A DNA stretch of 63,495 nt, the filler included, from Octopus bimaculoides (taxonomy: Eukaryota), in the NCBI RefSeq assembly GCF_001194135.2. It is 5 parts of 5 records of this genome, joined end to end, with 100 filler letters (N's around TTAATTAATTAA, not from the genome) between each part and the next. Parts side by side here need not be neighbours in the genome. Positions count along the whole stretch, not along the records: positions 44,804 to 61,371 come from NC_069004.1; 4 more parts are not named here. One strand, 5' to 3'. Position 1 is the first letter of the stretch. The number at the start of each line of letters is the position of its first letter. Both the position numbers and the translations under genes were made by a program. Positions 42,000-60,730 of the stretch are shown in pieces. The notes beneath the pieces are model-generated. The model did not search any database, was not told the origin of the DNA, and saw nothing but the letters and a program-made list of their open reading frames with translations.

Positions 42000-42405
42000 A
42001 AGGGCAAGCCAAGTGAGATCGTTGCCAGTGCCCCTGGACTGGCTCTTGTGCGGGTGGCACATAAGATGTACCATCCTGAGCGTGACCGTTGCCAGTACCG
42101 CCTGACTGGCCTTGTAGGGTTTTTGAGCGAGATCGTTGCCAGTACCCCTGGACTGGCTCTTGTGCAGGTGGCACATAAAAGACACCATTTCGAGCGTAGC
42201 CGTTTTCGTGCGGGTGACATGTAAAAGCACCCACTACACTCTCTGAGTGGTTGGCGTTAGGAAGGGCATCCAGCTGTAGAAACTCTGCCAAATTAGGTTG
42301 GAGCCTGGTGTAGCCATCCTGTTGCACCAGTCCTCAGTCAAATCGTCCAACCCATGCTAGCATGGAAAGCGGACGTTAAACGATGATGATGATGATGATG
42401 ATGAT
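42000..42405 (+). mobile_element. RTE 3'-end-derived element (minisatellite plus RTE tail)
   Basis: About three ~65-bp units, then GGTTGGCGTTAGGAAGGGCATCCAGCTGTAG...GGACGTTAAAC(GAT)n. Confidence 0.85.
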
Positions 42406-42449
42406 GACATATATAAATATATATATACAACTTTCAGGAAAATGGATAT

Positions 42450-42880
42450 ATCATCATCATCATCATTGTTTAACGTCCACTTTCCATGCTAGAATGGGTT
42501 GGATGATTTGAATGAGGACTGGTGAACTAGATGGCTGCACCAGGCTCCAATCTGATCTGGCAGAGTTTCTACAGCTGGAGGCCCTTCCTAACGCCAATCA
42601 CTTCGAGAGTGTAGTGGGTGCTTTTACGTGTCACCGGCATGAGGGCCAGTCAGGCAGTACTGGCAATGGCCATGCTCAAAATGGTATTTTTTTATGTGCC
42701 ACCTGCACAGTATCCAGTCCAGCGGCACTGGCAACAACCTCGCTCGAATGTTTTCAAACGTGCCACCGGCACAAGTGCCAGTAAGGCGACATTGGTAACG
42801 ATCACACTCAAATGGTGCTATTTACGTGTCACCGGCACGGAAGCCAGGCAGCTGCTCTTGCAATGATCACGCTCGGATGA
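42450..42880 (-). mobile_element. RTE 3'-end-derived element, inverted relative to 42000-42405
   Basis: (CAT)n, GTTTAACGTCCACTTTCCATGCTAG...GCCCTTCCTAACGCCAATC and reversed minisatellite units. Confidence 0.85.
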
Positions 42881-44938
42881 TATTTATGTATACAAATGAG
42901 TAAATATTTATGTATATATATGTGTATTTATGTTAAACGATGATGATGATGATGATATATCCAAGAAAGTTAGGGGTTGTGAATCCAACCCACTAAGTGA
43001 TAATATCTATCCAATATACTGCTGGAAGAATACCCAATTATTATTACACTAGTGTTTTTTCATTGCATGGCAATTTCATTACCAAGTGCAATAAATGGGT
43101 GCAGGTAAAAAGTTATTTTACCATTAAATTTATATAGCAATAAGAAAATGGAGGGGATTATTAGATGGTATTCATCAACTTGCAGACATTGTATTTATAT
43201 TGAAAAGAAAAAAAAAAAACCCAACACCCTTCCCTCCTAGTTCTATGCCTTGGCCTTCAAGCAGACTATTCACATGCTAGAAATAACAGCTAAATCTCAC
43301 ATGGGCAAGACCATTTTCAGTTCCACAAACACACGATGTTTTGCGCTGGTCAAATGATTCTCTTTAATTTCACTTTGGCACAGTNNNNNNNNNNNNNNNN
43401 NNNNNNNNNNNNNNNNNNNNNNNNNNNNNNNNNNNNNNNNNNNNNNNNNNNNNNNNNNNNNNNNNNNNNNNNNNNNNNNNNNNNNNNNNNNNNNNNNNNN
43501 NNNNNNNNNNNNNNNNNNNNNNNNNNNNNNNNNNNNNNNNNNNNNNNNNNNNNNNNNNNNNNNNNNNNNNNNNNNNNNNNNNNNNNNNNNNNNNNNNNNN
43601 NNNNNNNNNNNNNNNNNNNNNNNNNNNNNNNNNNNNNNNNNNNNNNNNNNNNNNNNNNNNNNNNNNNNNNNNNNNNNNNNNNNNNNNNNNNNNNNNNNNN
43701 NNNNNNNNNNNNNNNNNNNNNNNNNNNNNNNNNNNNNNNNNNNNNNNNNNNNNNNNNNNNNNNNNNNNNNNNNNNNNNNNNNNNNNNNNNNNNNNNNNNN
43801 NNNNNNNNNNNNNNNNNNNNNNNNNNNNNNNNNNNNNNNNNNNNNNNNNNNNNNNNNNNNNNNNNNNNNNNNNNNNNNNNNNNNNNNNNNNNNNNNNNNN
43901 NNNNNNNNNNNNNNNNNNNNNNNNNNNNNNNNNNNNNNNNNNNNNNNNNNNNNNNNGCGCGTAAAGCAACGGGAAAGTGGAGAGAGGACTTCGAAAAATT
44001 CACAAAATCCGAGTTTTTCCCTCATAACTTTTAGAAAAATGGGGGTTTTTTTCAATGAAATTTTATGGAAATACTTTTCAAACGGCATATATTACGATTA
44101 TAACGTGAAGTTTCCGAAACTCCTCTCTCCACCCTACCAGATTCGTTTGCGCAATTTTTTTTTTGTCATATTCGTTTTCTACTCAGTTAACACCCAACAG
44201 GCTGGGTTTTTTTGTTTTTTTTTAACGGGTGAAGATCTTTATATTAACCGCGACGTTTTCCTCAAATCGTATCTTACCTTCTTGGAAATGACGAATAATA
44301 GATAACTTTCATTGTCAAATTAAAAATATAAACACGGTTTTTTCCCTTGAACTTTTTCTGGGAATTGTCTCCCCTGAACCAGTCTATTATTTTCTGAATG
44401 TTTTTGTTTTGGTTAAAGAAATTGGGTAAAAGTTGCTACTGGTAAGTTTTAAATGTTTGTCCTTGTCGATAAGCTTACCGATATAAAGCAAATTATGAAA
44501 AATATCAAATAAAAATGTAAATGACGGCAAGACTTCCGCCCGTCCGTCCCCCCATCAAACCACCCGTTAAAAAATTTTTTTTTTTGGACACAAGCCCCAC
44601 TTTTCGGCTTCGGAGAATACGTATCAGCCAAAAAATTGGCTAAAAATCAGCATTTTTAAAATTACCAGCCTACCCCCATTTCCTTCATTTTTTTTTTTTA
44701 CTTNNNNNNNNNNNNNNNNNNNNNNNNNNNNNNNNNNNNNNNNNNNNTTAATTAATTAANNNNNNNNNNNNNNNNNNNNNNNNNNNNNNNNNNNNNNNNN
44801 NNNACAGAATAATGCCACACACTAGACTTCCAAAATAAACACATTTTTACCGTATGCGAGGAAAAGCAACTCTTAAAAAAACAAACTTTTAAAAACGAAC
44901 ATATATATATATATATACATACACATGTTATTTTGCAG

Positions 44939-45011
44939 TTATTAGTTGCAAAGAGCCGGGAATACCGAATGAGGCGCAAAGGACAGCCAAACGGCCAATC
45001 GGCAGCAGAGT
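44939..45011 (+). CDS. Factor C-like CCP-serine protease, first visible exon (N-half of CCP/sushi; phase 1 to 2)
   Basis: TTTTGCAG|TT...GT|GTAAGT; xISCKEPGIPNEAQRTAKRPIGSR; phase joins the 46233 exon to give GTG (Val). Not in the ORF track. Confidence 0.8.
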
Positions 45012-45569
45012 GTAAGTAAAAATCACATTCGTTGATTTAAACTAATAAACCAATCTAATTGAAGATGTTAATATAATTGACAAAATTGATTTAAAAAAAG
45101 TGTAACGTGTGCACAAATTTATATAACAATTGACACAAAATACCAATGCTTTGATTCCGATTCTCTGTAAATTGTCGTTTGTAATCCTACAGAGTGTGAG
45201 AAAGCAGTTCGGAATTTTATAAACGTTTGATAAACGTTTCAACAATTGACACACATACTCCACTGCTCCAAATCGTATTAATAATAATTAATAGCTACTT
45301 GAAGACACCATTACGAGTTGTCTAAACTTCAGAAGTGTCACGTCAATGGCCGAATTATAAAAAGGAGGTCTTTTTCTGTCATACTCTGTACATGCAAAGA
45401 TTTCGAGTTGCGTTTATTTATTATCGTTGATAATAGCTGTACGTGTCGGGGTTTCGATTCCACCGAGTGTCACTTTGGTTATCAGTAAATGACAGGTGGA
45501 ATTTAGGAGACGGAAAATCAGTCGCATGTATGTATGTATGTATGTATGTATGTATGTATGTATGTATTG

Positions 45570-45870
45570 TGAAGGTGCGTGGCCTAGTGGTTAGGGTATT
45601 CGGCTCACAATCGTAAGTTCGTGAGTTCGATTCCCAGGGATGCGTTGTGTCCTTGAGCAAGACGCTTTATTTCACGTCGCTCCAGTCCACTCAGTTGGCA
45701 AAAATAAGTTGTACCTGTATTTCAAAGGGTCAGCCTTGTCCCATTTTGTGTCACGCTGAATCTACCTGAGAACTGCTTGGAGATTATCCATTTCTGTGGA
45801 GTACTCAGTCACTTGCAAGTTAATTTCAGGAGCGGGCTGTTCCGTTGATCGGAGCGACTGGAACCGACGG
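45570..45870 (+). mobile_element. SINE family C
   Basis: GAAGGTGCGTGGCCTAGTGGTTAGGGTATTCGGC...GAGTTCGATTCCC...CCTTGAGCAAGACGCTTTATTTCAC. Confidence 0.8.
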
Positions 45871-46173
45871 TGTGCCAGTTAAGTTAATTCATGTATGTAT
45901 GTATGTATGTATGTATGTATGTATGTATGCATGCATGTATGTATGTATGTATGTATGTATGTATGTATGTATGTTATGTATGCATGTTTCCATCAGCGAA
46001 ATTCACTCACGTGGTTTGGTTGGCCTGCGAACATCTTGAATAAGACATTTACCCAAAGTGCTACGCAGTGTATTTGAACCCGAAACCACGTAGTTACAAA
46101 GCAAACTTCTTAATCTCACAGCCAACGCTGCGCCTACACGCACACACATACACACACACACACACATACACAT

Positions 46174-46204
<31 letters not shown>

Positions 46205-46232
46205 TTTCTCAAATATTATATTTCGTATCCAG

Positions 46233-46363
46233 GCGTGACGATTTCCCCATCGGTACGGTGTTGAGTTTTAAATGCCCATCGTTATATAAACTCTACGGAT
46301 CAGCAAACCGTAAATGTTTACCGACCACTGAGTGGACAGGGTCTCAACCTACCTGTGTCCCAG
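46233..46363 (+). CDS. Factor C-like protease, C-half of CCP/sushi (phase 2 to 1)
   Basis: TCCAG|G...G|GTAAG; RDDFPIGTVLSFKCPSLYKLYGSANRKCLPTTEWTGSQPTCVP (C..C..W..C sushi pattern). Confidence 0.92.
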
Positions 46364-46396
46364 GTAAGATCGAAACATTGAACCTATATAAGAATT

Positions 46397-46429
<33 letters not shown>

Positions 46430-46546
46430 NNNNNNNNNNNNNNNNNNNNNNNNNNNNNNNNNNNNNNNNNNNNNNNNNNNNNNNGAGAGAGAGGGGGGAG
46501 AGAGAGAGAGAGAGAGGGGGGAAGACAGTAATCCACGTCATCTTTT

Positions 46547-47115
46547 AATTGTTTCAGTCATTGGACTGTGGCCATGCTGGAGCAACACTTTGAGCGATTT
46601 TAGTCGAAGAAAACGAATCCTCTCATGCCTATTGTTTTGTCTGCTACTAAATTACATCGGTCCCTTTTGCTGAGCCGCTTATATACTGGGGCGTAAACAA
46701 ACCATAGCCGGTCGATCAACGGTGGTGAAGGCCAAATGCACATATTCACGCCCAAATGCACATATTCACGCCCAAATGTACATATTCACACACACACACA
46801 CACAATCACACACGCTCGCACACACACTCATACATACACTCACACACTCACACACATACAAGCACACTCACACACACAAACACACTCACACATACACACA
46901 CTCACACACATACAAGCACACTCACACACATACAAGCACACTCACACACACAAACACACTCACACATACACACACTCACACATACACACACTCACACACA
47001 CGCACACTCATACTCACGTATTCGTCGAGTTTCCGCACAGTCTCCGTCTACCAATTCACTCAAAAGGCATTGATCGTCCCGAGGCGATAAATAGAATATA
47101 TCTGCCCAATGTATC
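46547..47115 (-). mobile_element. SINE family A, diverged, with expanded (CA)-rich interior
   Basis: TTTCAGTCATTGGACTGTGGCCATGCTGGAGC...CCGTCTACCAATTCACTCA; includes a short ~20-bp tandem repeat near 46732-46790. Confidence 0.7.
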
Positions 47116-47124
47116 GTGCTGTGA

Positions 47125-47267
47125 TGTTAAGAAACTTGCTTTTCAATCAGGTGGTTTTAAGTTCAGTCCAACAGCGCGGCACCTTGGATAAGTCTCTTCT
47201 ACTATAGCCCCGAGCTAACCAAAGCCTCCTGATTGGATTTGGCAGACGGAAACTGAATAAACCCTTG

Positions 47268-47353
<86 letters not shown>

Positions 47354-47520
47354 TTTGTGTTTGTCTCTACAACATAGCAGTTCGGCAAACATTCCGATTA
47401 AGTAAGCCCCAGGTTTACTTAGGTATTGGGGTCGATTTGTTCGACTAAATCGTTCAGGGTGTTGCCCTAGCATGACCGTAGTCCAATGACTGAAAGAAGC
47501 AAAAGACAAAAGATGAAAGA
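47125..47520 (+). mobile_element. SINE family A, diverged, head-to-head with the previous copy
   Basis: GGCACCTTGGATAAGTCTCTTCTACTATAG...(TG)n...GCATGACCGTAGTCCAATGACTGAAAG. Confidence 0.75.
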
Positions 47521-47672
47521 TAAATAATAATTCCATTTTTCTCTTTCATGAACTCAAAAACTTGTCACCGATTATACTCGTTCACAGCTTCTGTAACAAT
47601 GTTTTCATTCGATGACACATTCGTTCATTTCAATAATTACATTCGTTTATTCCGTTATTCTTTTCAATTTAG

Positions 47673-47965
47673 AATGTGGACGAACCAGCAAACATGATTT
47701 GGACGTGGAGAATATACTCGGTGGTAGAGCATATCCTCGAGAAGCTATGCCGTGGCATGCGGCCATATCCACAGACATCGGTCTGAATGAAGTGGTCCTT
47801 AGATGCGGTGGCACTCTGATCAGCGATCGCTGGGTTTTGACCGCGGCACATTGTATCACAGCCTCAACATCCAAGGACTCCCTACCTCTACGTCAGATCA
47901 CGGTTCACATCAGTAAAGTGTACGCAAATAACTCTCGGGATGACAGATATGTCCAGAAGTTTCAG
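47673..47965 (+). CDS. Factor C-like protease, linker plus protease N-terminus with His57 (phase 1 to 0)
   Basis: TTTAG|AA...CAG|GTATG; (E)CGRTSKHDLDVEN-ILGG...MPWHAAIS...CGGTLISDRWVLTAAHC...KVYANNSRDDRYVQKFQ. Confidence 0.95.
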
Positions 47966-48426
47966 GTATGGAGGACACACATTATTATTTCTTACATTTA
48001 ATTGTTTATGCTATGATTTTATTTACTCCATGTACTCAGTCTTTGTGGATACCCTGTATAGTAGTTCTCTCTGTCAAAACTTTAAAACGTATCACCCGCT
48101 TCTCATCCCGAGCGCATCGTCTCTCTCTCTCTCTCTTGAGCTTCCTGTTACTCATGACTCCTTTTATTCTTACAGCTTATTTCCTCGAACTGCTGTTCTC
48201 TGGAACTCACTATCAGCATCTTCTTTTCCTCTGGTCTATGATATTCAGTCTTTTAAGCTTTCTGTCAAAGAACATCTTTGAATTTGGCGGACCCTTCTTT
48301 TCCCTTTTTTGTAGTACAGTACGCCACAGTAGCTTCATGTCTTGTTTGGGACAAAATCGTTAAGAAAATACTAATTGGTATTGTTTTTGTTTCTTTTTTT
48401 CTTCTTTTCCACCAATCGCAATTTAG

Positions 48427-48703
48427 GCTGACGATGTTTATATCCACGACTATTACCAACCATCAACAAAGAAGAACGATATTGCTTTGATTTACTTGTC
48501 CAGAAAAGTGAAACTCGGACCTTTCGCGAAGCCAATATGTCTGCCGGATAAATCAATGTTAATACACTATGCCATACAAGACACCAAAGGCTTTGTGTCT
48601 GGTTGGGGCCTAACTGAACAAAAAGTTAAGGCCAGTCGCTTACTGACCACCAAAGTATCGGTCTTCAAAGACGACGATTGTCTTAGAAATATCAGGAAAG
48701 AAT
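48427..48703 (+). CDS. Factor C-like protease, exon with Asp102 (phase 0 to 1)
   Basis: TTTAG|GCT...T|GTAAG; ADDVYIHDYYQPSTKKNDIALIYL...KPICLP...GFVSGWGLTE...DDCLRNIRKE. Confidence 0.95.
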
Positions 48704-49298
48704 GTAAGTTGAGAGAATCTCGGTGAAATTTTATTTGCTTTTATGTTAGAAGCAATTAGTTAAAGAAAGAAAAAAAACACAAAACATTCGCTGTCGTATC
48801 CACCCCGACCCCATTGCCTCGCTCCTTGACTGGGCAGTGCGCTGTGTTCTTGAGCAAAATCCTTCATTTCACTTTGCTCCAAATTCCACTTTCGATCGGT
48901 GGGGAATGCAGACCTGCTCGCCTAGCCAGCAGGGTGGCGTCATGCGAAGGCTAAAAACATTGCAAATGTGCATCGTGACTAGCGATGTATAAACAACACC
49001 TGGTAGTCTGGTCGGTCACGTGGTCACGTGGATATATATATATATATATATANNNNNNNNNNNNNNNNNNNNNNNNNNNNNNNNNNNNNNNNNNNNNNNN
49101 NNNNNNNNNNNNNNNNNNNNNNNNNNNNNNNNNNNNNNNNNNNNNNNNNNNNNNNNNNNNNNNNNNNNNNNNNTACATATAATAAATAATATATAGCAGA
49201 CACACACACACATATATGTATAAGCATATATATGTACAGGACGTCACCAACGGTGCAAATAACATGAACTACGTAAACAACGAGAGAAAAAATGGCAA

Positions 49299-49348
<50 letters not shown>

Positions 49349-49574
49349 ATATATCAAAACAGGATTGGAAAAAGATTCGTATTATTTATTCACCATTAAA
49401 TGTGTTTCATTTGCTAATAGGAGTTACAAAATTGTACATGTAGGAGAAGCATGTAAGATAATTGCTATTTGAAATTTTTCAGAGATTCAATCCGCTGTTT
49501 TGATGTATAATTACTCTGTATAAAAATGTTTCCGAGAATTTTCAACTCTTAAACATACCTCACACAAATTTAAC

Positions 49575-49735
49575 AGATGCACGACGGGCTTCTTTCAGTT
49601 TCTCCCCAACCAAATCCATTCACCAAGCTCTGGTCAGCCTGGAGGTACAGTAGAAGACACTTGCCCAAGGTGCCGCATAGTAGGACTGAACCCAAGACCA
49701 CAGAGTTGGAAAGCAAGCTGCTTAACCAATAGTCA
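49575..49735 (-). mobile_element. SINE family A, 5' half
   Basis: GACGGGCTTCTTTCAGTTTC...GAAGACACTTGCCCAAGGTGCC...GCTGCTTAACC. Confidence 0.75.
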
Positions 49736-49877
49736 TGTAGAAGTTTATTCACTCGGTTGTGAATTAAAATGGAGATGCGCCACTTTGTGTCGTTTCTCCC
49801 CTAAAAAAATATAAATATAAATCTCATAGAAGTACAGGGATATAACAGACTATCATTTTTGTTTCTTTTCTGAGCAG

Positions 49878-50006
49878 TTCCCAAAATGGAAAGCGAATAT
49901 CTAGAAAAGGTATTCTGTGCGGGAACGAGACCAACCGAAAACAGGGTACTCACTGATTCGCAAAAATACGATTCCGGTGGTGGTTTGGTGTTCAGGACAT
50001 GTCGTG
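49878..50006 (+). CDS. Factor C-like protease, exon with Ser195 (phase 1 to 1)
   Basis: TTTTCTGAGCAG|TT...G|GTACGT; (F)PKMESEYLEKVFCAGTRPTENRVLTDSQKYDSGGGLVFRTCR; 129 nt, phase-compatible on both sides. Missed by the ORF track. Confidence 0.9.
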
Positions 50007-50235
50007 GTACGTATAAATAATTATTTTTCTTTGAAGTTTTTAATTAATTCATTGAGGAAAAGGCGTGAAAACATAACTTCACACCTCATTTCCCCCATCC
50101 CACATTCCAAAACCTTCTACGTTGCTAACTATATTCGAAAAATAATGTCCTTATCATCACAATCAGCAACAGCATCATTGATTTCGAATATTGGTTTCAA
50201 ATTTTGGCACAAGGCAAGTAATTTCGGTCGAGGGT

Positions 50236-50283
<48 letters not shown>

Positions 50284-51122
50284 NNNNNNNNNNNNNNNNN
50301 NNNNNNNNNNNNNNNNNNNNNNNNNNNNNNNNNNNNNNNNNNNNNNNNNNNNNNNNNNNNNNNNNNNNNNNNNNNNNNNNNNNNNNNNNNNNNNNNNNNN
50401 NNNNNNNNNNNNNNNNNNNNNNNNNNNNNNNNNNNNNNNNNNNNNNNNNNNNNNNNNNNNNNNNNNNNNNNNNNNNNNNNNNNNNNNNNNNNNNNNNNNN
50501 NNNNNNNNNNNNNNNNNNNNNNNNNNNNNNNNNNNNNNNNNNNNNNNNNNNNNNNNNNNNNNNNNNNNNNNNNNNNNNNNNNNNNNNNNNNNNNNNNNNN
50601 NNNNNNNNNNNNNNNNNNNNNNNNNNNNNNNNNNNNNNNNNNNNNNNNNNNNNNNNNNNNNNNNNNNNNNNNNNNNNNNNNNNNNNNNNNNNNNNNNNNN
50701 NNNNNNNNNNNNNNNNNNNNNNNNNNNNNNNNNNNNNNNNNNNNNNNNNNNNNNNNNNNNNNNNNNNNNNNNNNNNNNNNNNNNNNNNNNNNNNNNNNNN
50801 NNNNNNNNNNNNNNNNNNNNNNNNNNNNNNNNNNNNNNNNNNNNNNNNNNNNNNNNNNNNNNNNNNNNNNNNNNNNNNNNNNNNNNNNNNNNNNNNNNNN
50901 NNNNNNNNNNNNNNNNNNNNNNNNNNNNNNNNNNNNNNNNNNNNNNNNNNNNNNNNNNNNNNNNNNNNNNNNNNNNNNNNNNNNNNNNNNNNNNNNNNNN
51001 NNNNNNNNNNNNNNNNNNNNNNNNNNNNNNNNNNNNNNNNNNNNNNNNNNNNNNNNNNNNNNNNNNNNNNNNNNNNNNNNNNNNNNNNNNNNNNNNNNNN
51101 NNNNNNNNNNNNNAATTTGAGG

Positions 51123-51166
<44 letters not shown>

Positions 51167-51179
51167 TACTACTACTACT

Positions 51180-51383
51180 GTGATGGGGGAATTGTTAGCA
51201 TGCTGGACGAAATGCTTAGCGGTATTTCGCCCGTCGCTACGTTCTGAGGTCAAATTCCGTCGAGGTCGACTTTGCCTTTCATCCTTTCGGAGTCGATAAA
51301 TTAAGTACCAGTTACGTACTGGAGTCGATGATATCGACTACCCCTCCCGCCAAATTTCAGGCCTTGTGCCTATAGTAGAAAGG

Positions 51384-51420
<37 letters not shown>

Positions 51421-51640
51421 GCGGGACATAGTTTGCAGGACCGTTTGCATGTTGGACAAAATGCGTCATGGCATTTCGTCCGTCTTTACGTTCTGAGCTC
51501 AGATTCCCTCGCGGTTGACTTTGCTTTTCATCCTATAGAGGTCAACATAATAAGTTCCAATCAAGTACTGGGGTCGATGTAATCGCCATACAAATCCCCC
51601 CAGGTTGCTGGCATTGTGCTAAAATTTGAAACCGTTATTA
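51180..51640 (+). mobile_element. Two head-to-tail SINE family B copies
   Basis: Units at about 51180-51385 and 51420-51640, separated by (ATT)n. Confidence 0.8.
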
Positions 51641-51701
51641 TCATTTTCATTATTGCTATTATTTATTTATTTATTTATTTATTTGTTTGTTCAATTTTCA
51701 G

Positions 51702-51814
51702 ATTACGTCGAAACGTGGTATCTAGAAGGGATCGTCAACTGGGGAGTGAAGAACGGTGTCGGAGTTTACATAAGAGTGATGAACTATATCAGTTGGATAA
51801 ACAGTGTGATCTGA
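51702..51814 (+). CDS. Factor C-like protease, terminal exon
   Basis: TTTTCAG|AT...TGA; (D)YVETWYLEGIVNWGVKNGVGVYIRVMNYISWINSVI*. Confidence 0.92.
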
Positions 51815-52124
51815 GTAAAGAGAAGACTTAGAATACGAGAAAGACAGAGAGAGAGGAGGAGGAGGGGGAGGAGGAGAAGAGAAAAAGAAGTAGGAGGAAG
51901 GGGAGAGCGAGGCATAGAGAACTAGGGAGAAGGAAGAGGTGAAGAACCGAAAGAACCGAAAGAAGAGAGAAAGAAAAGAATATGTAATGAATTTATTGAA
52001 TTTCATAAACAACAGAAAAAGAAAAAAATCAAAGTTTGGAAAGAAGAAAGAAAAGTTCGTACACACATAGTACGTATATATATAAATATAAATATATACA
52101 CTCTCTCATTATCTCGTTCCCTCG

Positions 52125-52182
<58 letters not shown>

Positions 52183-53058
52183 NNNNNNNNNNNNNNNNNN
52201 NNNNNNNNNNNNNNNNNNNNNNNNNNNNNNNNNNNNNNNNNNNNNNNNNNNNNNNNNNNNNNNNNNNNNNNNNNNNNNNNNNNNNNNNNNNNNNNNNNNN
52301 NNNNNNNNNNNNNNNNNNNNNNNNNNNNNNNNNNNNNNNNNNNNNNNNNNNNNNNNNNNNNNNNNNNNNNNNNNNNNNNNNNNNNNNNNNNNNNNNNNNN
52401 NNNNNNNNNNNNNNNNNNNNNNNNNNNNNNNNNNNNNNNNNNNNNNNNNNNNNNNNNNNNNNNNNNNNNNNNNNNNNNNNNNNNNNNNNNNNNNNNNNNN
52501 NNNNNNNNNNNNNNNNNNNNNNNNNNNNNNNNNNNNNNNNNNNNNNNNNNNNNNNNNNNNNNNNNNNNNNNNNNNNNNNNNNNNNNNNNNNNNNNNNNNN
52601 NNNNNNNNNNNNNNNNNNNNNNNNNNNNNNNNNNNNNNNNNNNNNNNNNNNNNNNNNNNNNNNNNNNNNNNNNNNNNNNNNNNNNNNNNNNNNNNNNNNN
52701 NNNNNNNNNNNNNNNNNNNNNNNNNNNNNNNNNNNNNNNNNNNNNNNNNNNNNNNNNNNNNNNNNNNNNNNNNNNNNNNNNNNNNNNNNNNNNNNNNNNN
52801 NNNNNNNNNNNNNNNNNNNNNNNNNNNNNNNNNNNNNNNNNNNNNNNNNNNNNNNNNNNNNNNNNNNNNNNNNNNNNNNNNNNNNNNNNNNNNNNNNNNN
52901 NNNNNNNNNNNNNNNNNNNNNNNNNNNNNNNNNNNNNNNNNNNNNNNNNNNNNNNNNNNNNNNNNNNNNNNNNNNNNNNNNNNNNNNNNNNNNNNNNNNN
53001 NNNNNNNNNNNNNNNNNNNNNNNNNNNNNNNNNNNNNNNNNNNNNNNNNNNNNNNNNN

Positions 53059-53089
<31 letters not shown>

Positions 53090-53592
53090 TGATTAGTACC
53101 AGTTTAACGTCTGTGTTCTCTAAGAACCGACGATACTGCTCTCTTACCCGCAGGAAGACATCTTCTCCAGCTGGTTATTGAGTGCATTTTCGCACCCGAT
53201 ATTCATTGCAGGCAGGAGAGAACTCCCGCGACATTATCTCCGATATATATGCATTTATTTATCTTTACATAAATATACACACCGGTTCATATAATAGCCC
53301 TCATATTTGCTAATACATATCGTCAATGATAATAAGCTTGTTGTAACTAAAGTAACAAATTTGAACAAACATGACATCTGTATCGACTTTTAGTCATTTT
53401 CGTTCGAGATTATCCGAGAACAATCAGTCATTGGCGTAAGAAAACGGCTAACAGAACATGCACTTCTGTTTGGTCAATACAGTCCATAAGTTGATGTGGT
53501 TTTTAAGTATTAAATTGAGATGAGATATCCAGTCACGTGACAGTGTTGCAGCTGCATGAATTCAGTCAAGACGACATTTATGCTTGTCACAT

Positions 53593-53680
<88 letters not shown>

Positions 53681-53683
53681 TCC

Positions 53684-53724
<41 letters not shown>

Positions 53725-53849
53725 ACACACATATATATATATATACACATACACCGAGGGGAAGCTGGAAATTTTCTGGCTTTGAGTAAAAGAAAGTACA
53801 GGAGGATAGCTTACTTATGATTTTACCCAGTATATTCCCCTCTCAGATT

Positions 53850-54245
53850 CACACACTTATTGCAGCGGTCCTTCAGTTTTTCTACGCCCTGCAAAAGAAC
53901 ACAGAAGTTTTGGGCCTCCTTAAAGCCAGGAACGTTTCAGCACCCCTTCATAAACGTATGACCGAATGCGTACTTTTCTGCAACCCCTTACGATCTAGTA
54001 TAAACACCACCACCCTCCTATTTCACGCTTTCTGCTCCCCAAGCATACTCCGATCCCCCTCGTCGTCATGTACCCTACGCCTGCAATGCATTGGGTGACA
54101 CTTTAACGAAAGCCTTCGTTGTTAAGCTCGAGTTCTTCGGCTGCCTATCCATTCTTGTCCAACCAGCTTCTGATTTTCTCCATCCATTGCTGTTCTTTAT
54201 TTGCTCTATGGTAACTCAAATACTCGTTCATAAAACGCACACACG
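53850..54245 (-). mobile_element. Probable mariner-like remnant
   Basis: Minus strand contains GAAGGGGTGCTGAAACGTTCCTGGC, resembling mariner TIRs; no clean ORF. Weak support. Confidence 0.3.
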
Positions 54246-55665
54246 TAAAGCATTCGTAGAGAACAAAGCAAACTGGAATATATATATTTCAATTATGTCC
54301 TTTCAGCACCTTTCTTTTTTTTCTTTTTTTTTTTGTTTAGTCCGGCAGAACCGCTAATTTATGAGGACTTAAACAAACCAACAACGGTTGTCAAGCAGTG
54401 GTGAGGGACAAACAGTGAAAAACACACACATACTCACACAAACGTGTGTATATATANNNNNNNNNNNNNNNNNNNNNNNNNNNNNNNNNNNNNNNNNNNN
54501 NNNNNNNNNNNNNNNNNNNNNNNNNNNNNNNNNNNNNNNNNNNNNNNNNNNNNNNNNTATAATATAATATAATATAATTATAATATAATATAATATAATA
54601 TAATATGATATAATATAATATAATATTTATGATATTATATTTGTGTGTGTATGTATGTATGTATGCATGCATGTATGCATGTATGTTTGCGTGTATGTAT
54701 GCAAGAATGAATATATTTATTGAGGTGACGTGCTGTCAGAATCGTTGGGATTCCGGGCCAAACGCTTGGCGGCATTTTATCCGTATTTACATTTTCAGTT
54801 CAAATTTCTGTAGAGAGTCAGCTTTGCTTTTCGTTCTTTCGTGGGGAGGAAATCGATGAAATATTGCACACCACCAGGCCTTGTACTTATTGTAGAAAAA
54901 GCTTATTATTTTACATACATTGCTCCACTTTATTTTTCCAAAATAAATATTCGGATATAATTTGTTTGTTGCTTTATTTTTTTCATAAATTACAATTTTT
55001 TCTTTCAAAAATGATCTGGATTGCGAAAGAGAAGTCAATGGGACCGAATTGTATACGGATGCACTCGCAAATGCACGTACATACTCATACATCTCTATGC
55101 ATCTATATGCAGGTGTACATATGCATATACACAGTCATAGGTAGAAAAACACACGACTATCCTTCAATCAGCCTGTTTCTCTGGCTATCTCTTTATCTCT
55201 ATCTCTCTCCCTCTCTCTCTCTCACTCACACGGCCATCTGTAACGGTCATATATAACAGACATCTATAAAGACCATATATAATGATCATATGCAACATGA
55301 GTCTAAAACATAATTCTTTTGATGAGAAGTTGTATGTAAATTGTTTTTATTTTCTATTTTGAGAGATTTAAAGGTAATATTAACAAGGAAAACTCCAAAA
55401 CAAAACGACAAATCAAAAGGAAATTAAAATTAAACAACACAAAATGTGAGTGTATTAAGTAAAGCAGCATCGAAATTTTGTTTCAGTTGCTTCTTATAAT
55501 CAGAATACTCATATCAGACGACGTAGGAAACAAGTGAAAATTAAAGGAGAAATCAATGGAATGATTTTAATGAAAACTGGTACGAGTAAATACATATGCA
55601 CATCGTCTCTATACATTCCGAATAGCAACTGTAACAGGACACTTATCTCATTGATTTTGGACGAG

Positions 55666-55880
55666 TTAAGTTTTTTTCTGTTTCCCATTATGCAAATAGA
55701 AAACTAAGATAAATGCTAGAAATGAGATGAAACGACCGAAAATCATAGGGAAGAATATGACGCCTCTTAAGTTATCTAGATCATACAATTTACAAGCCCC
55801 GCGTTCATTACACTTCATATCCCAGAGGATGCACACTAAATCGATGGCACGTCCAAATACAACCGGCGCAGGAAGGAAGC
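55666..55880 (-). CDS. OATP/SLCO organic anion transporter, terminal exon
   Basis: TATCCCAG|GC...TAA; (G)FLPAPVVFGRAIDLVCILWDMKCNERGACKLYDLDNLR...HNGKQKKT* (P.P..FG..ID..C..W...C...G.C..YD OATP motif). Confidence 0.95.
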
Positions 55881-57117
55881 CTGGGATAGAAAAGTAAAAA
55901 AAAAAGAACAAAGAGGTGCATAAGAAACTTTGGTATATACAAAATAAGTAACTGTTGAAAATGAAAATAACGTTCAAATTATATAGACTGAAAGCAAAGA
56001 CTCCTGATTTGTTGGAAGCGTTTAACAGCATTACTTAATGCCATACGGTTTACATCAGTTAAATTATTTGAAATATTTCAGCAGTCATTTGAATTTACGT
56101 CGGCAAAAATACAAACTCAGAACGAACGTTAAGAATGGAACCCCTTATGGAACTGTGTACTAAGCTCCTTAGAGACATAAATCGTACAAATTGTATTACG
56201 TTGTAAGTTCTGTCGTATTCTAATGTCTCAAATGATTTAAAAACATTTAAATTCTTATTCCAAGTCAAAAAGGTATGAGGTTAACATTGTATCAGATTTA
56301 TAAAAGTTGATCTGTGTTGGTTATATTATATTTTGAAAGGATTTGCCGTCAGAACAATATTAAAAAGACTGAAGTATTAGCTGAAATTTCTTTCGCGTAA
56401 TAAAGGGTGAATTTCAACACTTACAAACTATTTAAGGAATATTTCTAGGGCTTCATACAGTTATAGAAGCAAGAAGGGCTAAGTATGGATATAGAATTAA
56501 GTTTTTTAATATTACTATTTGCCATTTTAGTATTAAAGTTCCGTGTACAACTATAATGTAATTCAACATTATTCTTATTTAAAGTTTTAGGACATCTAGA
56601 ATTTATTTCAATTCCCTTACTCTTTAGGAATGTCCAAATATTGTTAAAACTTTGTGAAAGGAAAATACACCAGATGAACTACTAGATTAACCTATACTGT
56701 CAAATCATGTATAACTTAGCAACAACACTAATCTTTAAGCCTAATTCTTCAAATATTCATGAAATTTTTCAATGAAATTATTTAACTGTCAAGTTTTTAT
56801 ATTACCTTTTATAATAAGCTCGTCATCTCGATATGGCTAATGTTATAAATTATTGGATTTATTATGTAATACATATAAAAATCTCAAGGCCTATAAGCTC
56901 ACCAGTTTCACCGGAATTTAGCCAAGCCATCGCCACTGCAAAATAGAGTAATTTCTGTACCCTCTGAGTAAAATTGAAAGGAAGTAATGATCTCCAACCA
57001 TGTATCAATATTTTAATATCGGAATCACTGACTGATAGAATATTTAGTGAGAGGAAAGTCATATTCTCCTCTTGTTGTACAGTATTCACTACAAGAGACG
57101 AGTCATATTATACTTAC

Positions 57118-57182
57118 CGCCAGCAGATAAAACCATTGAGTAGAAGCCAATTCCGAGGGCCTTATCTTTCTCACTTGGTGTT
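57118..57182 (-). CDS. OATP/SLCO exon (phase 2 to 1)
   Basis: TTTTCCAG|A...G|GTAAGT; (R)TPSEKDKALGIGFYSMVLSAG; 65 nt, phases match both neighbours. Not in the ORF track. Confidence 0.88.
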
Positions 57183-57390
57183 CTGGAAAAGTATAATGGA
57201 AAAATGTCGAGATTATTACTATTTACTTCATAATTGAAATCTTACCGCGGTCATCATTACGTTTCGTCCTACCAGAGTTAATGAAATAAATAGCAGCCGA
57301 TCGAGTCATCCACACCAATTCCGTCAAAATGCTTTTCTTTGAACGAATATTAAAAACAAATGTTGTTGTTAAAAGATTACTGAGTGAGTG

Positions 57391-57777
57391 TTGTTATTGG
57401 CACTCCGTCGCTTACGACGTCGAGGGTTCCAGTTGATCCGATCAACGGAACAGCCTGCTCGTGAAATTAACGTGCAAGTGGCTGAGCACTCCACAGACAC
57501 GTGTACCCTTAACGTAGTTCTCGGGGATATTTAGCGTGACACAGAGTGACAAGGCTGACCGTTTGAATTACAGGTACAATAGAAACAGGAAGAAAGAGTA
57601 AGAGAAAGTTGTAGCGAAAGAGTACAGCAGGGTTCGCCACCATCACCTGCCGGAGCCTCGTGGGGCTTTTAGGTGTTTTCGCTCAATAAACACTCACAAC
57701 GCCCGGTCTGGGAATCGAAACCACGATCCTATGACCGCGAGTCTGCTGCCCTAACCACTGGGCCATTGCGCCTCCAC
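57391..57777 (-). mobile_element. SINE family D, full length, in an OATP intron
   Basis: Near-identical to 13461-13851. Confidence 0.9.
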
Positions 57778-58662
57778 AGTGAGTGAGAGTAGCGTAAGAA
57801 TATATGGCTAAAATCTTTATTTAGTTCCCGCTGAAGGACTTTTGCCATCTGAAGTCGATCAAATAAGTATTAGTTAAATATTAGGGTCAATTAATTACTT
57901 TTTTATAGATAGTAACTTTGTTCACAGGTTCAAACCTTTTATGTTCTTTACTGTTCCATACATTCAGTTGATGGACAAGAAAATCTATTATTATATCTCA
58001 TAATCTTCAAAGTAGTCCATGCCTTACCAGTCATATATTATACAAGATAAGACAAGACAATATCTGACAGTGTCATAGGAACCAAATATATATCGTAAGG
58101 CATTATCGAATACCATTTGATGAAAAGTGTTGCTTGTCATTCCAAATGTGTATTACATATCCTAAGACATTATGACTTATAATAATCAATGATACATTGA
58201 TTTTCATACCGATGTATACATACATACATATATACATACATGCATGCATGCATGTATGTATGTATATATGTAGAACTTGACATATCATAAGTTGTATCGT
58301 AGGTTTTATTTTTTCGATAAACATTTATCATATAACGTACGACATTAAGATGTGTCATAAGCAACAAAGCATAGATTTTCGTAGGAACGTACATAAGACG
58401 TGTCATAAATAGAAGTGTATTAAATCTCATATGACAAAAACAGGATAATTTACAGCTTAATCACAGAAAGACGGACAACACTAGAAACATTATTACAGAT
58501 TTCTGAGCCTGCTCGAGCAAAAAAAAAACAGATTACACCAAAAATGATGTGCTATCAGCAAACCAGAGACTATCTCTCAATGTATGCAACAGTGTGAGTT
58601 CCGCTGAAGACATCTAAAGACTGGATAATGTACCATATCAATCCATTTATACACGTACTCAC

Positions 58663-58817
58663 CTTACCATTAGAAGATAACCGGGTGGAACACTGGCCAT
58701 ACCAACAATGCCAATGATAGTCATAAGTACTATAAATAGATATTTGACCGGGCAATCAATGGGACACAGACCAGCAGTTGCTGACATTCCAGGGATTCCT
58801 TTGCAGTTGCTAAAATT
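58663..58817 (-). CDS. OATP/SLCO exon (end of Kazal-like loop plus TM; phase 0 to 2)
   Basis: TTTTACAG|AAT...AG|GTGAGT; NFSNCKGIPGMSATAGLCPIDCPVKYLFIVLMTIIGIVGMASVPPGYLLMV. Confidence 0.92.
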
Positions 58818-58888
58818 CTGTAAAAGAAAAATGGAAATACAAGAAGCGGTAATGAATGTATACATATATGCACACTCAGATATAGTCG

Positions 58889-58932
<44 letters not shown>

Positions 58933-59777
58933 CCCTCTCACACATGCGCGTGCACGCACATATATAATATTGTCCGAAGTGTACAGTATTACATATCCAT
59001 TACCGTCTTACCAATCGGTTTCGCACTCGGGATTCAACGGCGTGTTAGGTAACAATCCGATTATGTAACCCTGTGTTCATCAGAAGTAGCCGTTATGGAA
59101 TGAAATATAGCGGCTGCCTCTATTCTTCGGATAATATACCCATTCTATTGACAGATATGCGAGCGCATTTTTCCTGACTTATGGATTCTTAGATTACTTA
59201 CACGCGCGCGCACACACACATCTACGTGTATATACATATATATTAAGGTCCTAAAATGGCAGAAAGACACGGTACTTTCAATGCAGTTCTCAACCCGAGC
59301 CTTTGGTTATCTACACTCTTGTAGTCTTAGGTAAGATCGAAATTGTTCCAGTATAGAATATTCAGGTGTTATATTGACAAAACGAATGTCTGAGTCTAGC
59401 GAAGAGTAATATACAATCCAAATAAGGAAACAAAGAAATACGTTGTCACATCTTTAAGTACCAGTTACAATGCTTCTGTCCAACTCTGTTTTTAAAACCA
59501 ATTCATGTTCAATATGAAGAGTTACGTAATATTTACAGTTTTAAACATTTGGGTGGCACTTCATCGGGGCTTGTGACAAAGCTGCAGCCATAAATTGTGC
59601 GGCTGCCAAACGTTGTTTTTGGTTTCAATCGGAAGTGTGTGTAGAGAGAGAGAGAGAGAGAGAGAGTGTGTGTGTGTGTGTGTGTGTGTGTAGTGAACAT
59701 ATAGAGGAATGAAGAAATAAAGATGGAAAAGGAAGAAGAAAACGGTACATTAAGATTAAAAAATGCTTTGAACTTAC

Positions 59778-59913
59778 AAAATTATTTCCTTCCATACATC
59801 CAGCATGGCAGGGTGAGAAATAATTCTGTTGATCGGAACCACATACAGGGAAATACTGGCGAATATCACAATTGCAATCATCAACTAATGCCGACATATT
59901 GGCATTTAGGGAA
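59778..59913 (-). CDS. OATP/SLCO exon (Kazal-like domain; phase 2 to 0)
   Basis: TTTCAG|T...TTT|GTAAGT; SLNANMSALVDDCNCDIRQYFPVCGSDQQNYFSPCHAGCMEGNNF (PVCG...Y.SPC.AGC signature). Confidence 0.95.
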
Positions 59914-60285
59914 CTGAAAGGAAAACAGACGATAGGTATTTTTGTTATTTTAATCTCAGTTTGTCTCTCAATGAGTTCTGTTAGGATCAAAAGTAAAGGG
60001 TAGAAAACCCCCTTTGGTCATGAATGACCATGGGATCGCACCTAGAGACACAAGTCCGAACAGGTTTGTTTATGGAAGACCAGCAGTCAGTCGCCCATGC
60101 ATGACAGTCTTCCCTCTCTCCATGCCACCGATGTTATTCAATGGAAAGGCAACGGTTGATAATTGATGATGATGATGACGACGACGACGACGACGATGAT
60201 GATGGCTACAAAAACAAAAACATCAAGGACAACGACAGCGGAAGCAGACGCAACAATAACAACAATAATAATAACAACCACTTAC

Positions 60286-60478
60286 AAATTATTCATAGGA
60301 CTGTTGTTTATGAGAGGTGCTTCACAGCGCATGCAAGATGCAATAATCTCCAGGACGATGCAAATACCATATGCAATCAGCTTCATCAAAATCATCCCTC
60401 GTTTTTCAAGTCTCAATCGAGTAATTACGAGACAGCCAAGCATTATTCCAACCAGGGATCCCAGAAGCCCGACAATAG
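60286..60478 (-). CDS. OATP/SLCO exon (two TM segments; phase 1 to 2)
   Basis: TTTACAG|CT...TT|GTAAGT; (A)IVGLLGSLVGIMLGCLVITRLRLEKRG...IIASCMRCEAPLINNSPMNN. Confidence 0.9.
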
Positions 60479-60527
60479 CTGTAAAGAGATGAATTTTAAT
60501 AATATTATGGATGTACATAAATCTGAA

Positions 60528-60730
60528 AGCTGGCAGAATCGTTAGCGCGCCGAGCAAAATGGGGCATTTCTTCCGTCTTTAAATTCTGAGTTCAAATTCT
60601 GCCGTGGTCGACTTTGCTTTTCATCCTTTCGGTTTCGATAAAATAAGTACCAGTTGAGCATTGGAGGTAGATGTAATCGACTTTCCTCTCCCGCCGAACG
60701 GGCTGGCCTTGTACCAAAATTTGAAACCAA
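60528..60730 (+). mobile_element. SINE family B
   Basis: GCTGGCAGAATCGTTAGCGCGCCG...GTCGACTTTGCTTTTCATCCTTTCGG...AAAATTTGAAACC. Confidence 0.85.

What the first reader, a model, noticed from the sequence alone, without database searches (positions are those of the whole stretch)
49955..51760. Catalytic triad kept but oxyanion hole and S1 pocket rebuilt: DSQKYDSGGG, Asn214, no Cys191-Cys220
Seen: His57 (TAAHC), Asp102 (NDIAL) and Ser195 (TCC at 49973-49975) are present. The usual D-[SA]-C-x-G-D-S-G-G-P reads D-S-Q-K-Y-D-S-G-G-G, so Cys191 is Gln and Gly193 is Tyr. The last exon reads GIVNWGVKNGVGVY, so Ser214 is Asn, the 220 loop is shortened and Cys220 is absent. An extra Cys appears in FRTCRD. 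Known: Gly193 forms the oxyanion hole, and Cys191-Cys220 braces the S1 pocket. Loss of both cysteines with an open frame and intact splice sites suggests selection rather than decay. Inference: a triad-intact pseudo-protease (decoy or regulator of an immune cascade) or an enzyme with new specificity; a motif scan would wrongly call it active.
Basis: partly seen in the sequence, partly recalled or inferred. Interest (0 to 1): 0.7.

Follow-up and report, generated by a model that had tools for sequence, protein, structure and literature searches.

The report
Cephalopod factor C-like protease, remodelled site
The odd active-site residues are real and belong to a secreted, factor C-like serine protease gene of octopus that has kept this rebuilt active site under purifying selection since before octopuses and cuttlefish split, so it is a working gene, most likely a restricted protease rather than a dead one.

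Summary
The window is Octopus bimaculoides chromosome CM046624.1. On the + strand lie six exons with canonical splice sites. They encode half a Sushi domain, a linker and a complete S1 protease domain. His57, Asp102, Ser195, Asp189 and Asp194 are kept. Cys191 is Gln, Gly193 is Tyr, Ser214 is Asn, Cys220 is gone, the 220-loop is about 6 residues shorter, and there is a new Cys near position 204.

The assembly gap lies wholly inside an intron. The gapless O. vulgaris orthologue has only repeats there, and mRNA contigs of relatives join the same residues directly.

The full-length O. vulgaris orthologue (566 aa) has a signal peptide, a factor C-type Cys-rich module, three Sushi domains and the protease domain. 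It carries identical motifs. dN/dS is 0.16 (p = 3e-14).

Argonauta, Sepia esculenta and a fourth lineage share the main changes: no Cys191 or Cys220, Tyr/Phe193, Lys/Arg192, the short loop and Cys204. All outgroup factor C-like proteins are canonical.

Its hint that the protein is catalytically dead is not supported. The oxyanion hole uses backbone amides, and active enzymes exist with Arg193, Phe193 or Ser193, or without Cys191-Cys220. I favour a narrow-specificity, inhibitor-resistant, Arg/Lys-directed protease (about 0.55). It is a new variant of a known kind.

The parts
44939..45011 (+). Exon encoding the first half of Sushi domain 3 (V)ISCKEPGIPNEAQRTAKRPIGSR(V). Not in the NCBI gene model.
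   Evidence: tblastn with the O. vulgaris orthologue gives 84% identity. AG acceptor and GT donor read. The phase fits the next exon.
46233..46363 (+). Exon encoding the second half of Sushi domain 3 (RDDFPIGTVLSFKCPSLYKLYGSANRKCLPTTEWTGSQPTCVP). Not in the NCBI model.
   Evidence: AG/GT splice sites. Pfam Sushi E = 3e-6. 95% identical to O. vulgaris.
47673..47965 (+). Exon with the linker Cys (ECGRTSK), the non-basic activation site VEN|ILGG (Asn AAT 47711-47713, Ile16 ATA 47714-47716), Cys42, and His57 (47849-47851, TAAHC).
   Evidence: The NCBI model XP_014774764.2 starts only at the internal Met at 47747.
48427..48703 (+). Exon with Asp102 (48478-48480, NDIAL), Cys122 (PICLP), SGWG without Cys136, and Cys168.
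49878..50006 (+). Exon with Cys182 (FCAG), a lengthened 186-loop (TRPTENRVLT), Asp189 (49955-49957), Gln191 (49961-49963), Lys192, Tyr193 (49967-49969), Asp194, Ser195 (49973-49975), GGG, and the new Cys~204 (50000-50002).
50007..51701 (+). Phase-1 intron holding the assembly gap (50284-51113). The gap is flanked by (AGT)n and (ATT)n microsatellites. The intron also holds two tandem ~250-nt SINE-like copies (about 51138-51380 and 51384-51640).
   Evidence: GT donor and AG acceptor. The flanks are orthologous to the gapless O. vulgaris intron L002 34869-36732.
51702..51814 (+). Last coding exon: (D)YVETWYLEGIV-N214-W215-G216-VKNGV-G226-VYIRVMNYISWINSVI plus the TGA stop (51812-51814). No Cys220, and a short 220-loop.

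Best explanation
The finding is the 3' end of the O. bimaculoides orthologue of a coleoid-cephalopod-specific, secreted mosaic serine protease derived from the factor C lineage. Its parts are a signal peptide, a factor C-type Cys-rich module, three Sushi domains and an S1 protease domain.

Shown:
- The gene is intact where the assembly has sequence.
- It is under purifying selection.
- The main active-site changes arose before the octopus/cuttlefish split and have been kept since. These are Cys191 and Cys220 both lost, an aromatic residue at 193, a basic residue at 192, the 220-loop about 6 residues shorter, the 186-loop 4-8 residues longer, and a new formally unpaired Cys near 204.
- The triad, Asp189, Asp194, Gly216, Gly226 and the Ile16 N-terminus are retained.

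Inferred mechanism: it is still a catalyst, and Asp189 directs it to Arg/Lys at P1. The bulky Tyr/Phe193 narrows the S1'/S2' side, as Phe193 does in TSV-PA and Arg193 in mesotrypsin. This would restrict it to one or a few substrates and make it poorly inhibited by canonical inhibitors and serpins. The rebuilt loops retune the S1 pocket. Like factor C, it probably sits at the top of a haemolymph recognition cascade, docking through the Cys-rich and Sushi modules. It would be switched on at a non-basic bond (Asn|Ile in octopods, Pro|Ile in decapodiforms) by clustering or autocatalysis rather than by an upstream trypsin-like enzyme.
For: Identity and gene model:
- All exons have AG/GT sites and one continuous frame.
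- The sequence is 100% identical to XP_014774764.2.
- The locus is syntenic with O. vulgaris CAI9740175.1, 566 aa, 288/313 identical, with every unusual residue the same.

Selection:
- O. bimaculoides vs O. vulgaris: dN 0.044, dS 0.268, omega 0.16, Fisher p = 3e-14.
- There are synonymous differences inside the motif codons.
- Sepia vs Lin3: omega about 0.1, with dS near saturation.

Age:
- The same main changes occur in Argonauta hians (66% identical), Sepia esculenta mRNA (seen in 61 RNA-seq runs; run SRR23936172 is identified in PMC10442824) and Lin3 mRNA.
- All outgroup factor C-like proteins are canonical.

Architecture:
- Pfam finds 3 Sushi domains plus Trypsin.
- The N-terminal module matches the factor C Cys-rich domain: blastp E = 5e-9, 5e-8 and 7e-6.
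- The nearest solved folds are the CCP-CCP-SP fragments of MASP-1/2/3, C1r and C1s.

Catalytic competence is plausible:
- All catalytic and S1-floor residues are invariant at 43-66% overall identity.
- There are precedents for residue 193 (PMC5413004, PMC11511063, PMC5551965) and for loss of Cys191-Cys220 in cathepsins and granzymes (bioRxiv 10.1101/515718).
- A non-basic activation P1 is a family trait: L, F, Y or S in the outgroups, and the F-I site in horseshoe crab factor C (PMC11836539).
Against: - There are no activity, expression-site or protein-level data for any member.
- Ablating Cys191-Cys220 cripples FXIIa, FVIIa and thrombin (bioRxiv 10.1101/515718). Non-Gly residues at 193 impair several proteases.
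- Here four perturbations coincide: residues 191, 193 and 220, plus both specificity loops.
- Pro at P1 in the decapodiform proteins is a very poor cleavage site, so the Ile16 N-terminus may never be released.
- AlphaFold models the 186/190s segment with low confidence (pLDDT about 61-63), so its geometry is unknown.
- The RWR LPS-binding tripeptide of factor C is not conserved, so the trigger cannot be assumed to be LPS.
Confidence: 0.55

Rival explanations
1. Triad-intact pseudo-protease. The S1 domain no longer turns over substrates and acts as a binding module, a decoy, or a cofactor or regulator of another protease. The conserved former active site serves as a docking surface, and Cys204 makes a covalent link to a partner.
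For: - Several catalytically sensitive features are lost at once: Gly193, Cys191-Cys220 and the native 186 and 220 loops.
- Loss of that disulfide inactivates or cripples FXIIa, FVIIa and thrombin (bioRxiv 10.1101/515718).
- The activation P1 is Asn or Pro, which is hard to cleave.
- The mature protein has a conserved odd number of cysteines, 29, suggesting a covalent partner.
- Strong purifying selection is equally compatible with a binding role.
Against: - Known S1 pseudo-proteases have lost at least one triad residue (haptoglobin, HGF, azurocidin, arthropod SPHs; from established knowledge).
- Here His57, Asp102, Ser195, Asp194, Asp189 and the Ile16 motif are all invariant across lineages only 43-66% identical.
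- Each single change has active precedents (PMC5551965, PMC5413004, PMC11511063).
Confidence: 0.25
2. Permanently single-chain, ligand-gated enzyme. The Asn|Ile or Pro|Ile bond is never cut. The domain stays zymogen-like and becomes transiently active only when the Cys-rich and Sushi modules bind a surface or a cofactor, as in the uncleaved 'active transition state' described for factor C.
For: - Pro at P1 in Sepia and Lin3, and Asn in the octopods.
- Factor C is reported to act through an LPS-induced active state and intermolecular autocatalysis (Shibata et al. 2018, as cited in PMC11836539).
- The activation linker has low model confidence (pLDDT below 50 for residues 304-313).
Against: Ile16-x-x-Gly19 and Asp194 are strictly conserved. 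That is what one expects if a new N-terminus is released and inserted. The linker Cys that would hold two chains together is also kept.
Confidence: 0.15
3. Artefact or decay. The motif comes from an assembly error, from a mis-join across the gap of exons from two gene copies, or from a young pseudogene.
For: - The finding spans an 830-N gap.
- The NCBI model is N-terminally truncated.
- Upstream exons are missing from the assembly.
Against: - The gap is intronic and the intron is orthologous to a gapless one.
- The same join is present in O. vulgaris and in spliced mRNAs of relatives.
- omega is 0.16.
- The motifs are identical in an independent long-read assembly.
- The missing exons fall where gaps lie.
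Confidence: 0.02

Closest known systems
Horseshoe crab / arthropod clotting factor C (and factor C-like proteins of ticks, scorpions, hemichordates, crinoids)
   Same: - Homologous N-terminal Cys-rich module (E down to 5e-9).
- Sushi repeats lie immediately before an S1 domain joined by a linker Cys.
- The S1 domains are the nearest canonical sequence relatives (tick, 39% identity).
- The activation site is non-basic.
- Asp189 is present.
- NCBI already names the octopus proteins 'clotting factor C(-like)'.
   Different: - Only 3 Sushi domains, and no EGF, LCCL or C-type lectin domain.
- The RWR LPS tripeptide is replaced by GWF, NWY or EHF.
- Cys191-Cys220 is lost, residue 193 is Tyr/Phe, the 220-loop is short, the 186-loop is long, and there is an extra Cys204.
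- P1 is Asn or Pro instead of Phe.
MASP-1/-2/-3, C1r, C1s (complement-initiating CCP-CCP-SP proteases)
   Same: - Best structural matches to the model (Foldseek E = 1e-28 to 1e-21).
- Among the best sequence matches in the PDB (E about 1e-28).
- The same CCP-CCP-SP arrangement, with the linker Cys bonded to Cys122.
- A role as recognition-coupled apex proteases.
   Different: - No CUB-EGF-CUB region.
- Those enzymes are activated at an Arg-Ile bond.
- Their Gly193 and Cys191-Cys220 are canonical.
TSV-PA (Trimeresurus stejnegeri venom plasminogen activator, Phe193), human mesotrypsin (Arg193) and KLK10 (Ser193)
   Same: A non-glycine residue, aromatic in TSV-PA, sits at position 193 next to an intact triad and Asp189. 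In TSV-PA and mesotrypsin that residue gives narrow macromolecular specificity and resistance to protein inhibitors (PMC11511063, PMC5551965, PMC5413004).
   Different: They are single-domain proteases that keep Cys191-Cys220 and normal 186 and 220 loops. The resemblance is convergent, not by descent.
Granule-associated proteases: cathepsin G, chymases, granzymes
   Same: They are active S1A proteases that naturally lack the Cys191-Cys220 disulfide (bioRxiv 10.1101/515718, citing Yousef et al. 2004).
   Different: They are vertebrate single-domain enzymes with a dipeptide propeptide. They have Gly193 and full-length 220-loops, and are an unrelated lineage.

Membership tests
Peptidase family S1A (chymotrypsin fold) | Trypsin-domain sequence and fold | tested here: met
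   Pfam PF00089 E = 9e-39 over the full model, positions 1-220. PDB hits have E about 1e-28. The AlphaFold core has pLDDT above 90, and Foldseek TM is 0.8-0.87 to thrombin and MASP-2.
Peptidase family S1A (chymotrypsin fold) | Catalytic triad His57/Asp102/Ser195, plus Asp194 and the Ile16 N-terminus | tested here: met
   All are present in O. bimaculoides and invariant in five family sequences.
Peptidase family S1A (chymotrypsin fold) | Gly193 and the Cys191-Cys220 disulfide (near-universal, not strictly defining) | tested here: not met
   Residue 193 is Tyr/Phe, residue 191 is Gln/Ala/Ser, and there is no Cys220. The background frequencies are 95% for Gly193 and 96% for Cys191.
Peptidase family S1A (chymotrypsin fold) | Hydrolytic activity | not testable with these tools
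   This needs an enzyme assay or an activity-based probe.
Clotting factor C family | N-terminal Cys-rich module followed by Sushi repeats and a C-terminal S1 domain | tested here: met
   blastp of the N-terminal module gives E = 5e-9, 5e-8 and 7e-6 against Ptychodera, Anneissia and tick factor C-like proteins. Pfam finds 3 Sushi domains plus Trypsin.
Clotting factor C family | EGF, LCCL and C-type lectin domains, and five Sushi repeats | tested here: not met
   Pfam finds none of these in P0112, P0114 or P0121, but does find EGF, LCCL and 4 Sushi domains in tick factor C.
Clotting factor C family | RWR tripeptide, the LPS recognition site (PMC11836539, citing Koshiba 2007) | tested here: not met
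   The aligned positions read GWF, NWY or EHF in cephalopods, while Ptychodera and Anneissia keep RWR.
Clotting factor C family | Non-basic (Phe-Ile type) A/B-chain activation bond | tested here: inconclusive
   P1 is non-basic as in the family (L, F, Y or S in the outgroups), but it is Asn or Pro here. Cleavage itself was not tested.
Clotting factor C family | LPS-triggered autocatalytic activation that starts a clotting cascade | not testable with these tools
   This is a biochemical property.
MASP/C1r/C1s family | CUB-EGF-CUB N-terminal region and an Arg-Ile activation site | tested here: not met
   There are no CUB or EGF hits, and P1 is Asn. Only the CCP-CCP-SP part resembles these proteases.
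S1 pseudo-proteases (serine protease homologues) | Replacement of at least one catalytic triad residue | tested here: not met
   The triad is intact in all lineages.

The most novel reading that the evidence does not exclude
This is an S1 domain that has kept a complete catalytic triad for hundreds of millions of years while being catalytically silent or only ligand-gated. It would work as a covalently tethered (Cys204) recognition or adaptor subunit of a cephalopod haemolymph defence complex. That would make it a true 'triad-intact pseudo-protease' that motif-based annotation cannot detect.
Probability: 0.2. Interest if true: 0.7.

Novelty: new variant of a known kind. Interest (0 to 1): 0.45.

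Why it matters
Very little is known about proteolytic immune cascades in cephalopods. This gene is a conserved, single-copy, factor C-derived candidate for the top of such a cascade.

It also combines four perturbations that protease biochemists usually study one at a time: residue 193, loss of Cys191-Cys220, and changes to both S1 specificity loops. It could show how far the S1 scaffold can be rebuilt while keeping, or losing, catalysis.

For annotation, the O. bimaculoides RefSeq model is truncated, and the name 'clotting factor C' overstates what is known about the protein.

Tried and rejected
- The first word-index protein search found no relative above 34% identity apart from the window's own protein. 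This wrongly suggested an orphan gene. The orthologue appeared only through the cluster look-up and the exhaustive search.
- Six-frame reading of the sequence upstream of 46233 did not reveal further exons by eye. tblastn with the orthologue then found the Sushi-3a exon and, outside the piece, the Cys-rich exon. The Sushi 1 and 2 exons and exons 1-2 fall in assembly gaps.
- Literature searches for cephalopod factor C-like proteins gave nothing relevant. The octopus mucus proteome paper mentions only 'von Willebrand factor C domain'. PMC4162196 is not held.
- The AlphaFold model gives no coordinates here, so I could not inspect the position of Tyr193 or the neighbours of Cys204. Only confidence values and fold matches were usable.
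- Pseudogene and mis-join readings were rejected.
- dS between Sepia and Lin3 is near saturation (pS 0.68), so that omega is only indicative.
- The species of Lin3 (run SRR24189497) was not identified.
Full report
**What is in the window.** The piece 44804-61371 is identical, gaps included, to Octopus bimaculoides assembly GCA_001194135.2, chromosome CM046624.1. tblastn with trypsin, followed by reading of the DNA, shows a + strand gene with the following exons: 46233-46363, 47673-47965, 48427-48703, 49878-50006 and 51702-51814. Each is bounded by AG and GT, and together they give one continuous frame. A sixth exon at 44939-45011 was found with the orthologue. The conceptual product has the second half of a Sushi domain (Pfam E = 3e-6) and a complete trypsin domain (Pfam E = 9e-39).

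**Checking the observation.**
- His57 is at 47849-47851, Asp102 at 48478-48480 and Ser195 (TCC) at 49973-49975.
- The motif reads D189-S-Q191-K192-Y193-D194-S195-G-G-G.
- The last exon reads GIV-N214-WGVKNGVGVY, with no Cys220.
- A Cys at 50000-50002 (FRTCRD) is at about position 204.
- Asp189, Gly216 and Gly226 are also present, so the floor and walls of a trypsin-type S1 pocket are kept.
- Against the nearest canonical relatives, the 220-loop is about 6 residues shorter and the 186-loop is 4 residues longer.
- Cys136 is absent, as it is in factor C-like proteins generally. The new Cys is therefore not the classical Cys201.

**The gap.** The gap at 50284-51113 lies between a GT donor at 50007 and an AG acceptor at 51700-51701. 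Both junctions are phase 1 and together form an Asp codon. The sequence on each side of the gap aligns to the gapless O. vulgaris intron (L002 34869-36732) at 88% and 84% identity. That intron contains only (ATT)n runs and SINE-like repeats. The O. vulgaris protein and uninterrupted mRNA contigs of two relatives join the same residues directly. The gap therefore hides no coding sequence. The paired loss of Cys191, on one side of the gap, and Cys220, on the other, belongs to one gene.

**Orthologues and selection.**
- The RefSeq protein XP_014774764.2 (245 aa, 'clotting factor C') is a truncated model that starts at an internal Met.
- Its 90% cluster also holds O. vulgaris CAI9740175.1 (566 aa, 'limulus clotting factor C-like').
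- That protein is 288/313 identical to my model and identical at every unusual residue.
- Its locus is syntenic, with the same OATP gene downstream on the opposite strand.
- Over 313 codons, dN = 0.044, dS = 0.268 and omega = 0.16 (Fisher p = 3e-14). For the protease domain alone omega is 0.18.
- Several motif codons differ synonymously between the two species, including Gln191 (CAA against CAG).
- An exhaustive profile-free search of 1.8 billion representatives found only two more close clusters. One is Argonauta hians GAB1610081.1 (66% identical). The other is a lineage known from RNA-seq contigs of about 2 kb ('Lin3', 50% identical).
- A family-profile search added a fourth lineage, present in 61 RNA-seq runs. 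One of those runs, SRR23936172, is Sepia esculenta larvae (PMC10442824).
- Sepia against Lin3 gives omega of about 0.1, with dS near saturation.

**Shared and lineage-specific changes.** All lineages share the following:
- no Cys191 (Gln, Ala or Ser instead);
- Lys or Arg at 192;
- Tyr or Phe at 193;
- DSGGG;
- a Cys at about 204;
- the short loop WGVK(N/D)G(V/I)GVY.

Ser214Asn is found only in the octopods. Every outgroup factor C-like protein is canonical, with DxCxGDSGGP plus Cys220. These outgroups come from a hemichordate, a crinoid, scorpions, ticks, and an unnamed RNA-seq protein with C-type lectin, Sushi and protease domains. The remodelling therefore arose once, before the octopodiform/decapodiform split, and has been maintained since. 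In a sample of 546 other S1 domains, 95% have Gly193, 96% have Cys191 and about 1% lack both.

**What the protein is.**
- Full-length members have a signal peptide, a 10-Cys N-terminal module, three Sushi domains and the protease domain.
- The N-terminal module is homologous to the Cys-rich domain of factor C-like proteins (pairwise E = 5e-9 to 7e-6).
- The RWR tripeptide, described as the LPS recognition site of factor C (PMC11836539), is retained in the hemichordate and crinoid proteins. In cephalopods it reads GWF, NWY or EHF.
- There is no EGF, LCCL or C-type lectin domain.
- The activation bond is Asn|Ile in octopods and Pro|Ile in Sepia and Lin3. Outgroups have Leu, Phe, Tyr or Ser at P1, and horseshoe crab factor C has Phe-Ile (PMC11836539).
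- The mature protein has 29 cysteines at conserved positions in the three full-length proteins counted (O. vulgaris, Argonauta, Lin3). After the standard pairs are assigned, Cys204 is left over.
- AlphaFold models the Sushi domains and the protease core confidently. The activation linker and residues 501-520, which cover the 186-loop and the 189-195 segment, are modelled poorly.
- The nearest solved folds are the CCP-CCP-SP fragments of MASP-3, MASP-1, MASP-2, C1r and C1s.

**How it most likely works.** The hole is built from the backbone amides of residues 193 and 195 (PMC5551965, PMC9016712), and side chains at 193 are tolerated:
- TSV-PA has Phe193, which is held to explain its narrow specificity and inhibitor resistance (PMC11511063).

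The Cys191-Cys220 bond is absent in cathepsins and granzymes, although removing it from FXIIa, FVIIa or thrombin is damaging (bioRxiv 10.1101/515718).

The triad, Asp189, Asp194, Gly196/197, Gly216/226 and Ile16-x-x-Gly19 are all invariant across lineages only 43-66% identical. I therefore infer a still-catalytic, Arg/Lys-directed protease whose aromatic residue 193 and rebuilt loops restrict it to few substrates and shield it from canonical inhibitors. It would act as a recognition-coupled apex protease like factor C or the MASPs. I put this at about 0.55.

The rival readings are:
- A triad-intact pseudo-protease remains possible (about 0.25), because several sensitive features changed together and Pro at P1 is hard to cleave.
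- A never-cleaved, ligand-gated single-chain enzyme is a third option (about 0.15).
- Artefact or decay is excluded (about 0.02).

**Comparison and novelty.** The protein is best described as a shortened, active-site-remodelled derivative of the factor C lineage, restricted to coleoid cephalopods as far as the databases show. It fails several factor C membership features: the domain set, the RWR tripeptide, and the canonical 191/193/220 residues. The database name 'clotting factor C' should therefore be read as 'factor C-like'. I found no paper describing it. It is a new variant of a known kind and of moderate interest.

Noticed in passing
window 47747 (start of the NCBI model), with exons at 44939-45011, 46233-46363 and 47673-47746: RefSeq XP_014774764.2 (245 aa) begins at an internal Met inside the protease domain. 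It omits the Ile16 N-terminus, the linker and the Sushi exons that are present in the assembly. The gene model is truncated by assembly gaps, not by biology.
   Followed up: yes
L001 1200-1355 (= window coordinates 38946-39101, outside the piece); gaps at 39359-42580 and 43349-44803: The exon for the N-terminal Cys-rich module is present 6 kb upstream, 96% identical to O. vulgaris. The Sushi 1 and 2 exons expected between it and 44939 fall in two large N gaps.
   Followed up: partly
window 50000-50002 (Cys~204); P0112 Cys528: O. vulgaris, Argonauta and Lin3 each have exactly 29 cysteines in the mature protein, at conserved positions. After the standard pairs are assigned, the new protease-domain Cys is unpaired. 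This suggests an intermolecular disulfide (dimer or partner) or a free thiol.
   Followed up: partly
window 47711-47716; P0112 310-311: The activation-site P1 is Asn in Octopus and Argonauta and Pro in Sepia and Lin3. Neither is a normal target for a trypsin-like activator. Outgroup factor C-like proteins have Leu, Phe, Tyr or Ser.
   Followed up: partly
P0112 residues 53-70 (O. bimaculoides exon at L001 1200-1355): The RWR tripeptide reported as the LPS-binding site of factor C is conserved in hemichordate and crinoid factor C-like proteins (YFYRWRPYCK). It reads GWF, NWY or EHF in cephalopods, so the ligand may differ.
   Followed up: partly
window 50235-50283, 51114-51191, 51138-51380 and 51384-51640: The gap is flanked by (AGT)n and (ATT)n microsatellites. 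The intron holds two tandem ~250-nt SINE-like copies (78% identical), each preceded by (ATT)n. These repeats probably caused the assembly break. The O. vulgaris intron has a much longer (ATT)n run.
   Followed up: partly
window 55666-61371, - strand (e.g. ORFs 55666-56031 and 59625-59990): A convergently oriented OATP/SLCO-type organic anion transporter gene lies downstream (Pfam OATP, MFS_1, weak Kazal_2 on the called product). The same neighbour is present in O. vulgaris, confirming synteny.
   Followed up: partly
P0124 (domain 2) and P0166 (both domains): Three unrelated S1 domains in multi-domain proteins carry Tyr193 with Cys191 retained (DACQYDSGGP). About 5% of the 546 surveyed triad-bearing domains have a non-Gly residue at 193, so residue 193 variation is more common than textbook motifs suggest.
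   Followed up: no
window 51815-51960: The 3' flank just after the stop codon is a purine-rich low-complexity tract (GA/GGA repeats), followed by (AT)n up to the next gap at 52183. No polyadenylation signal was looked for.
   Followed up: no
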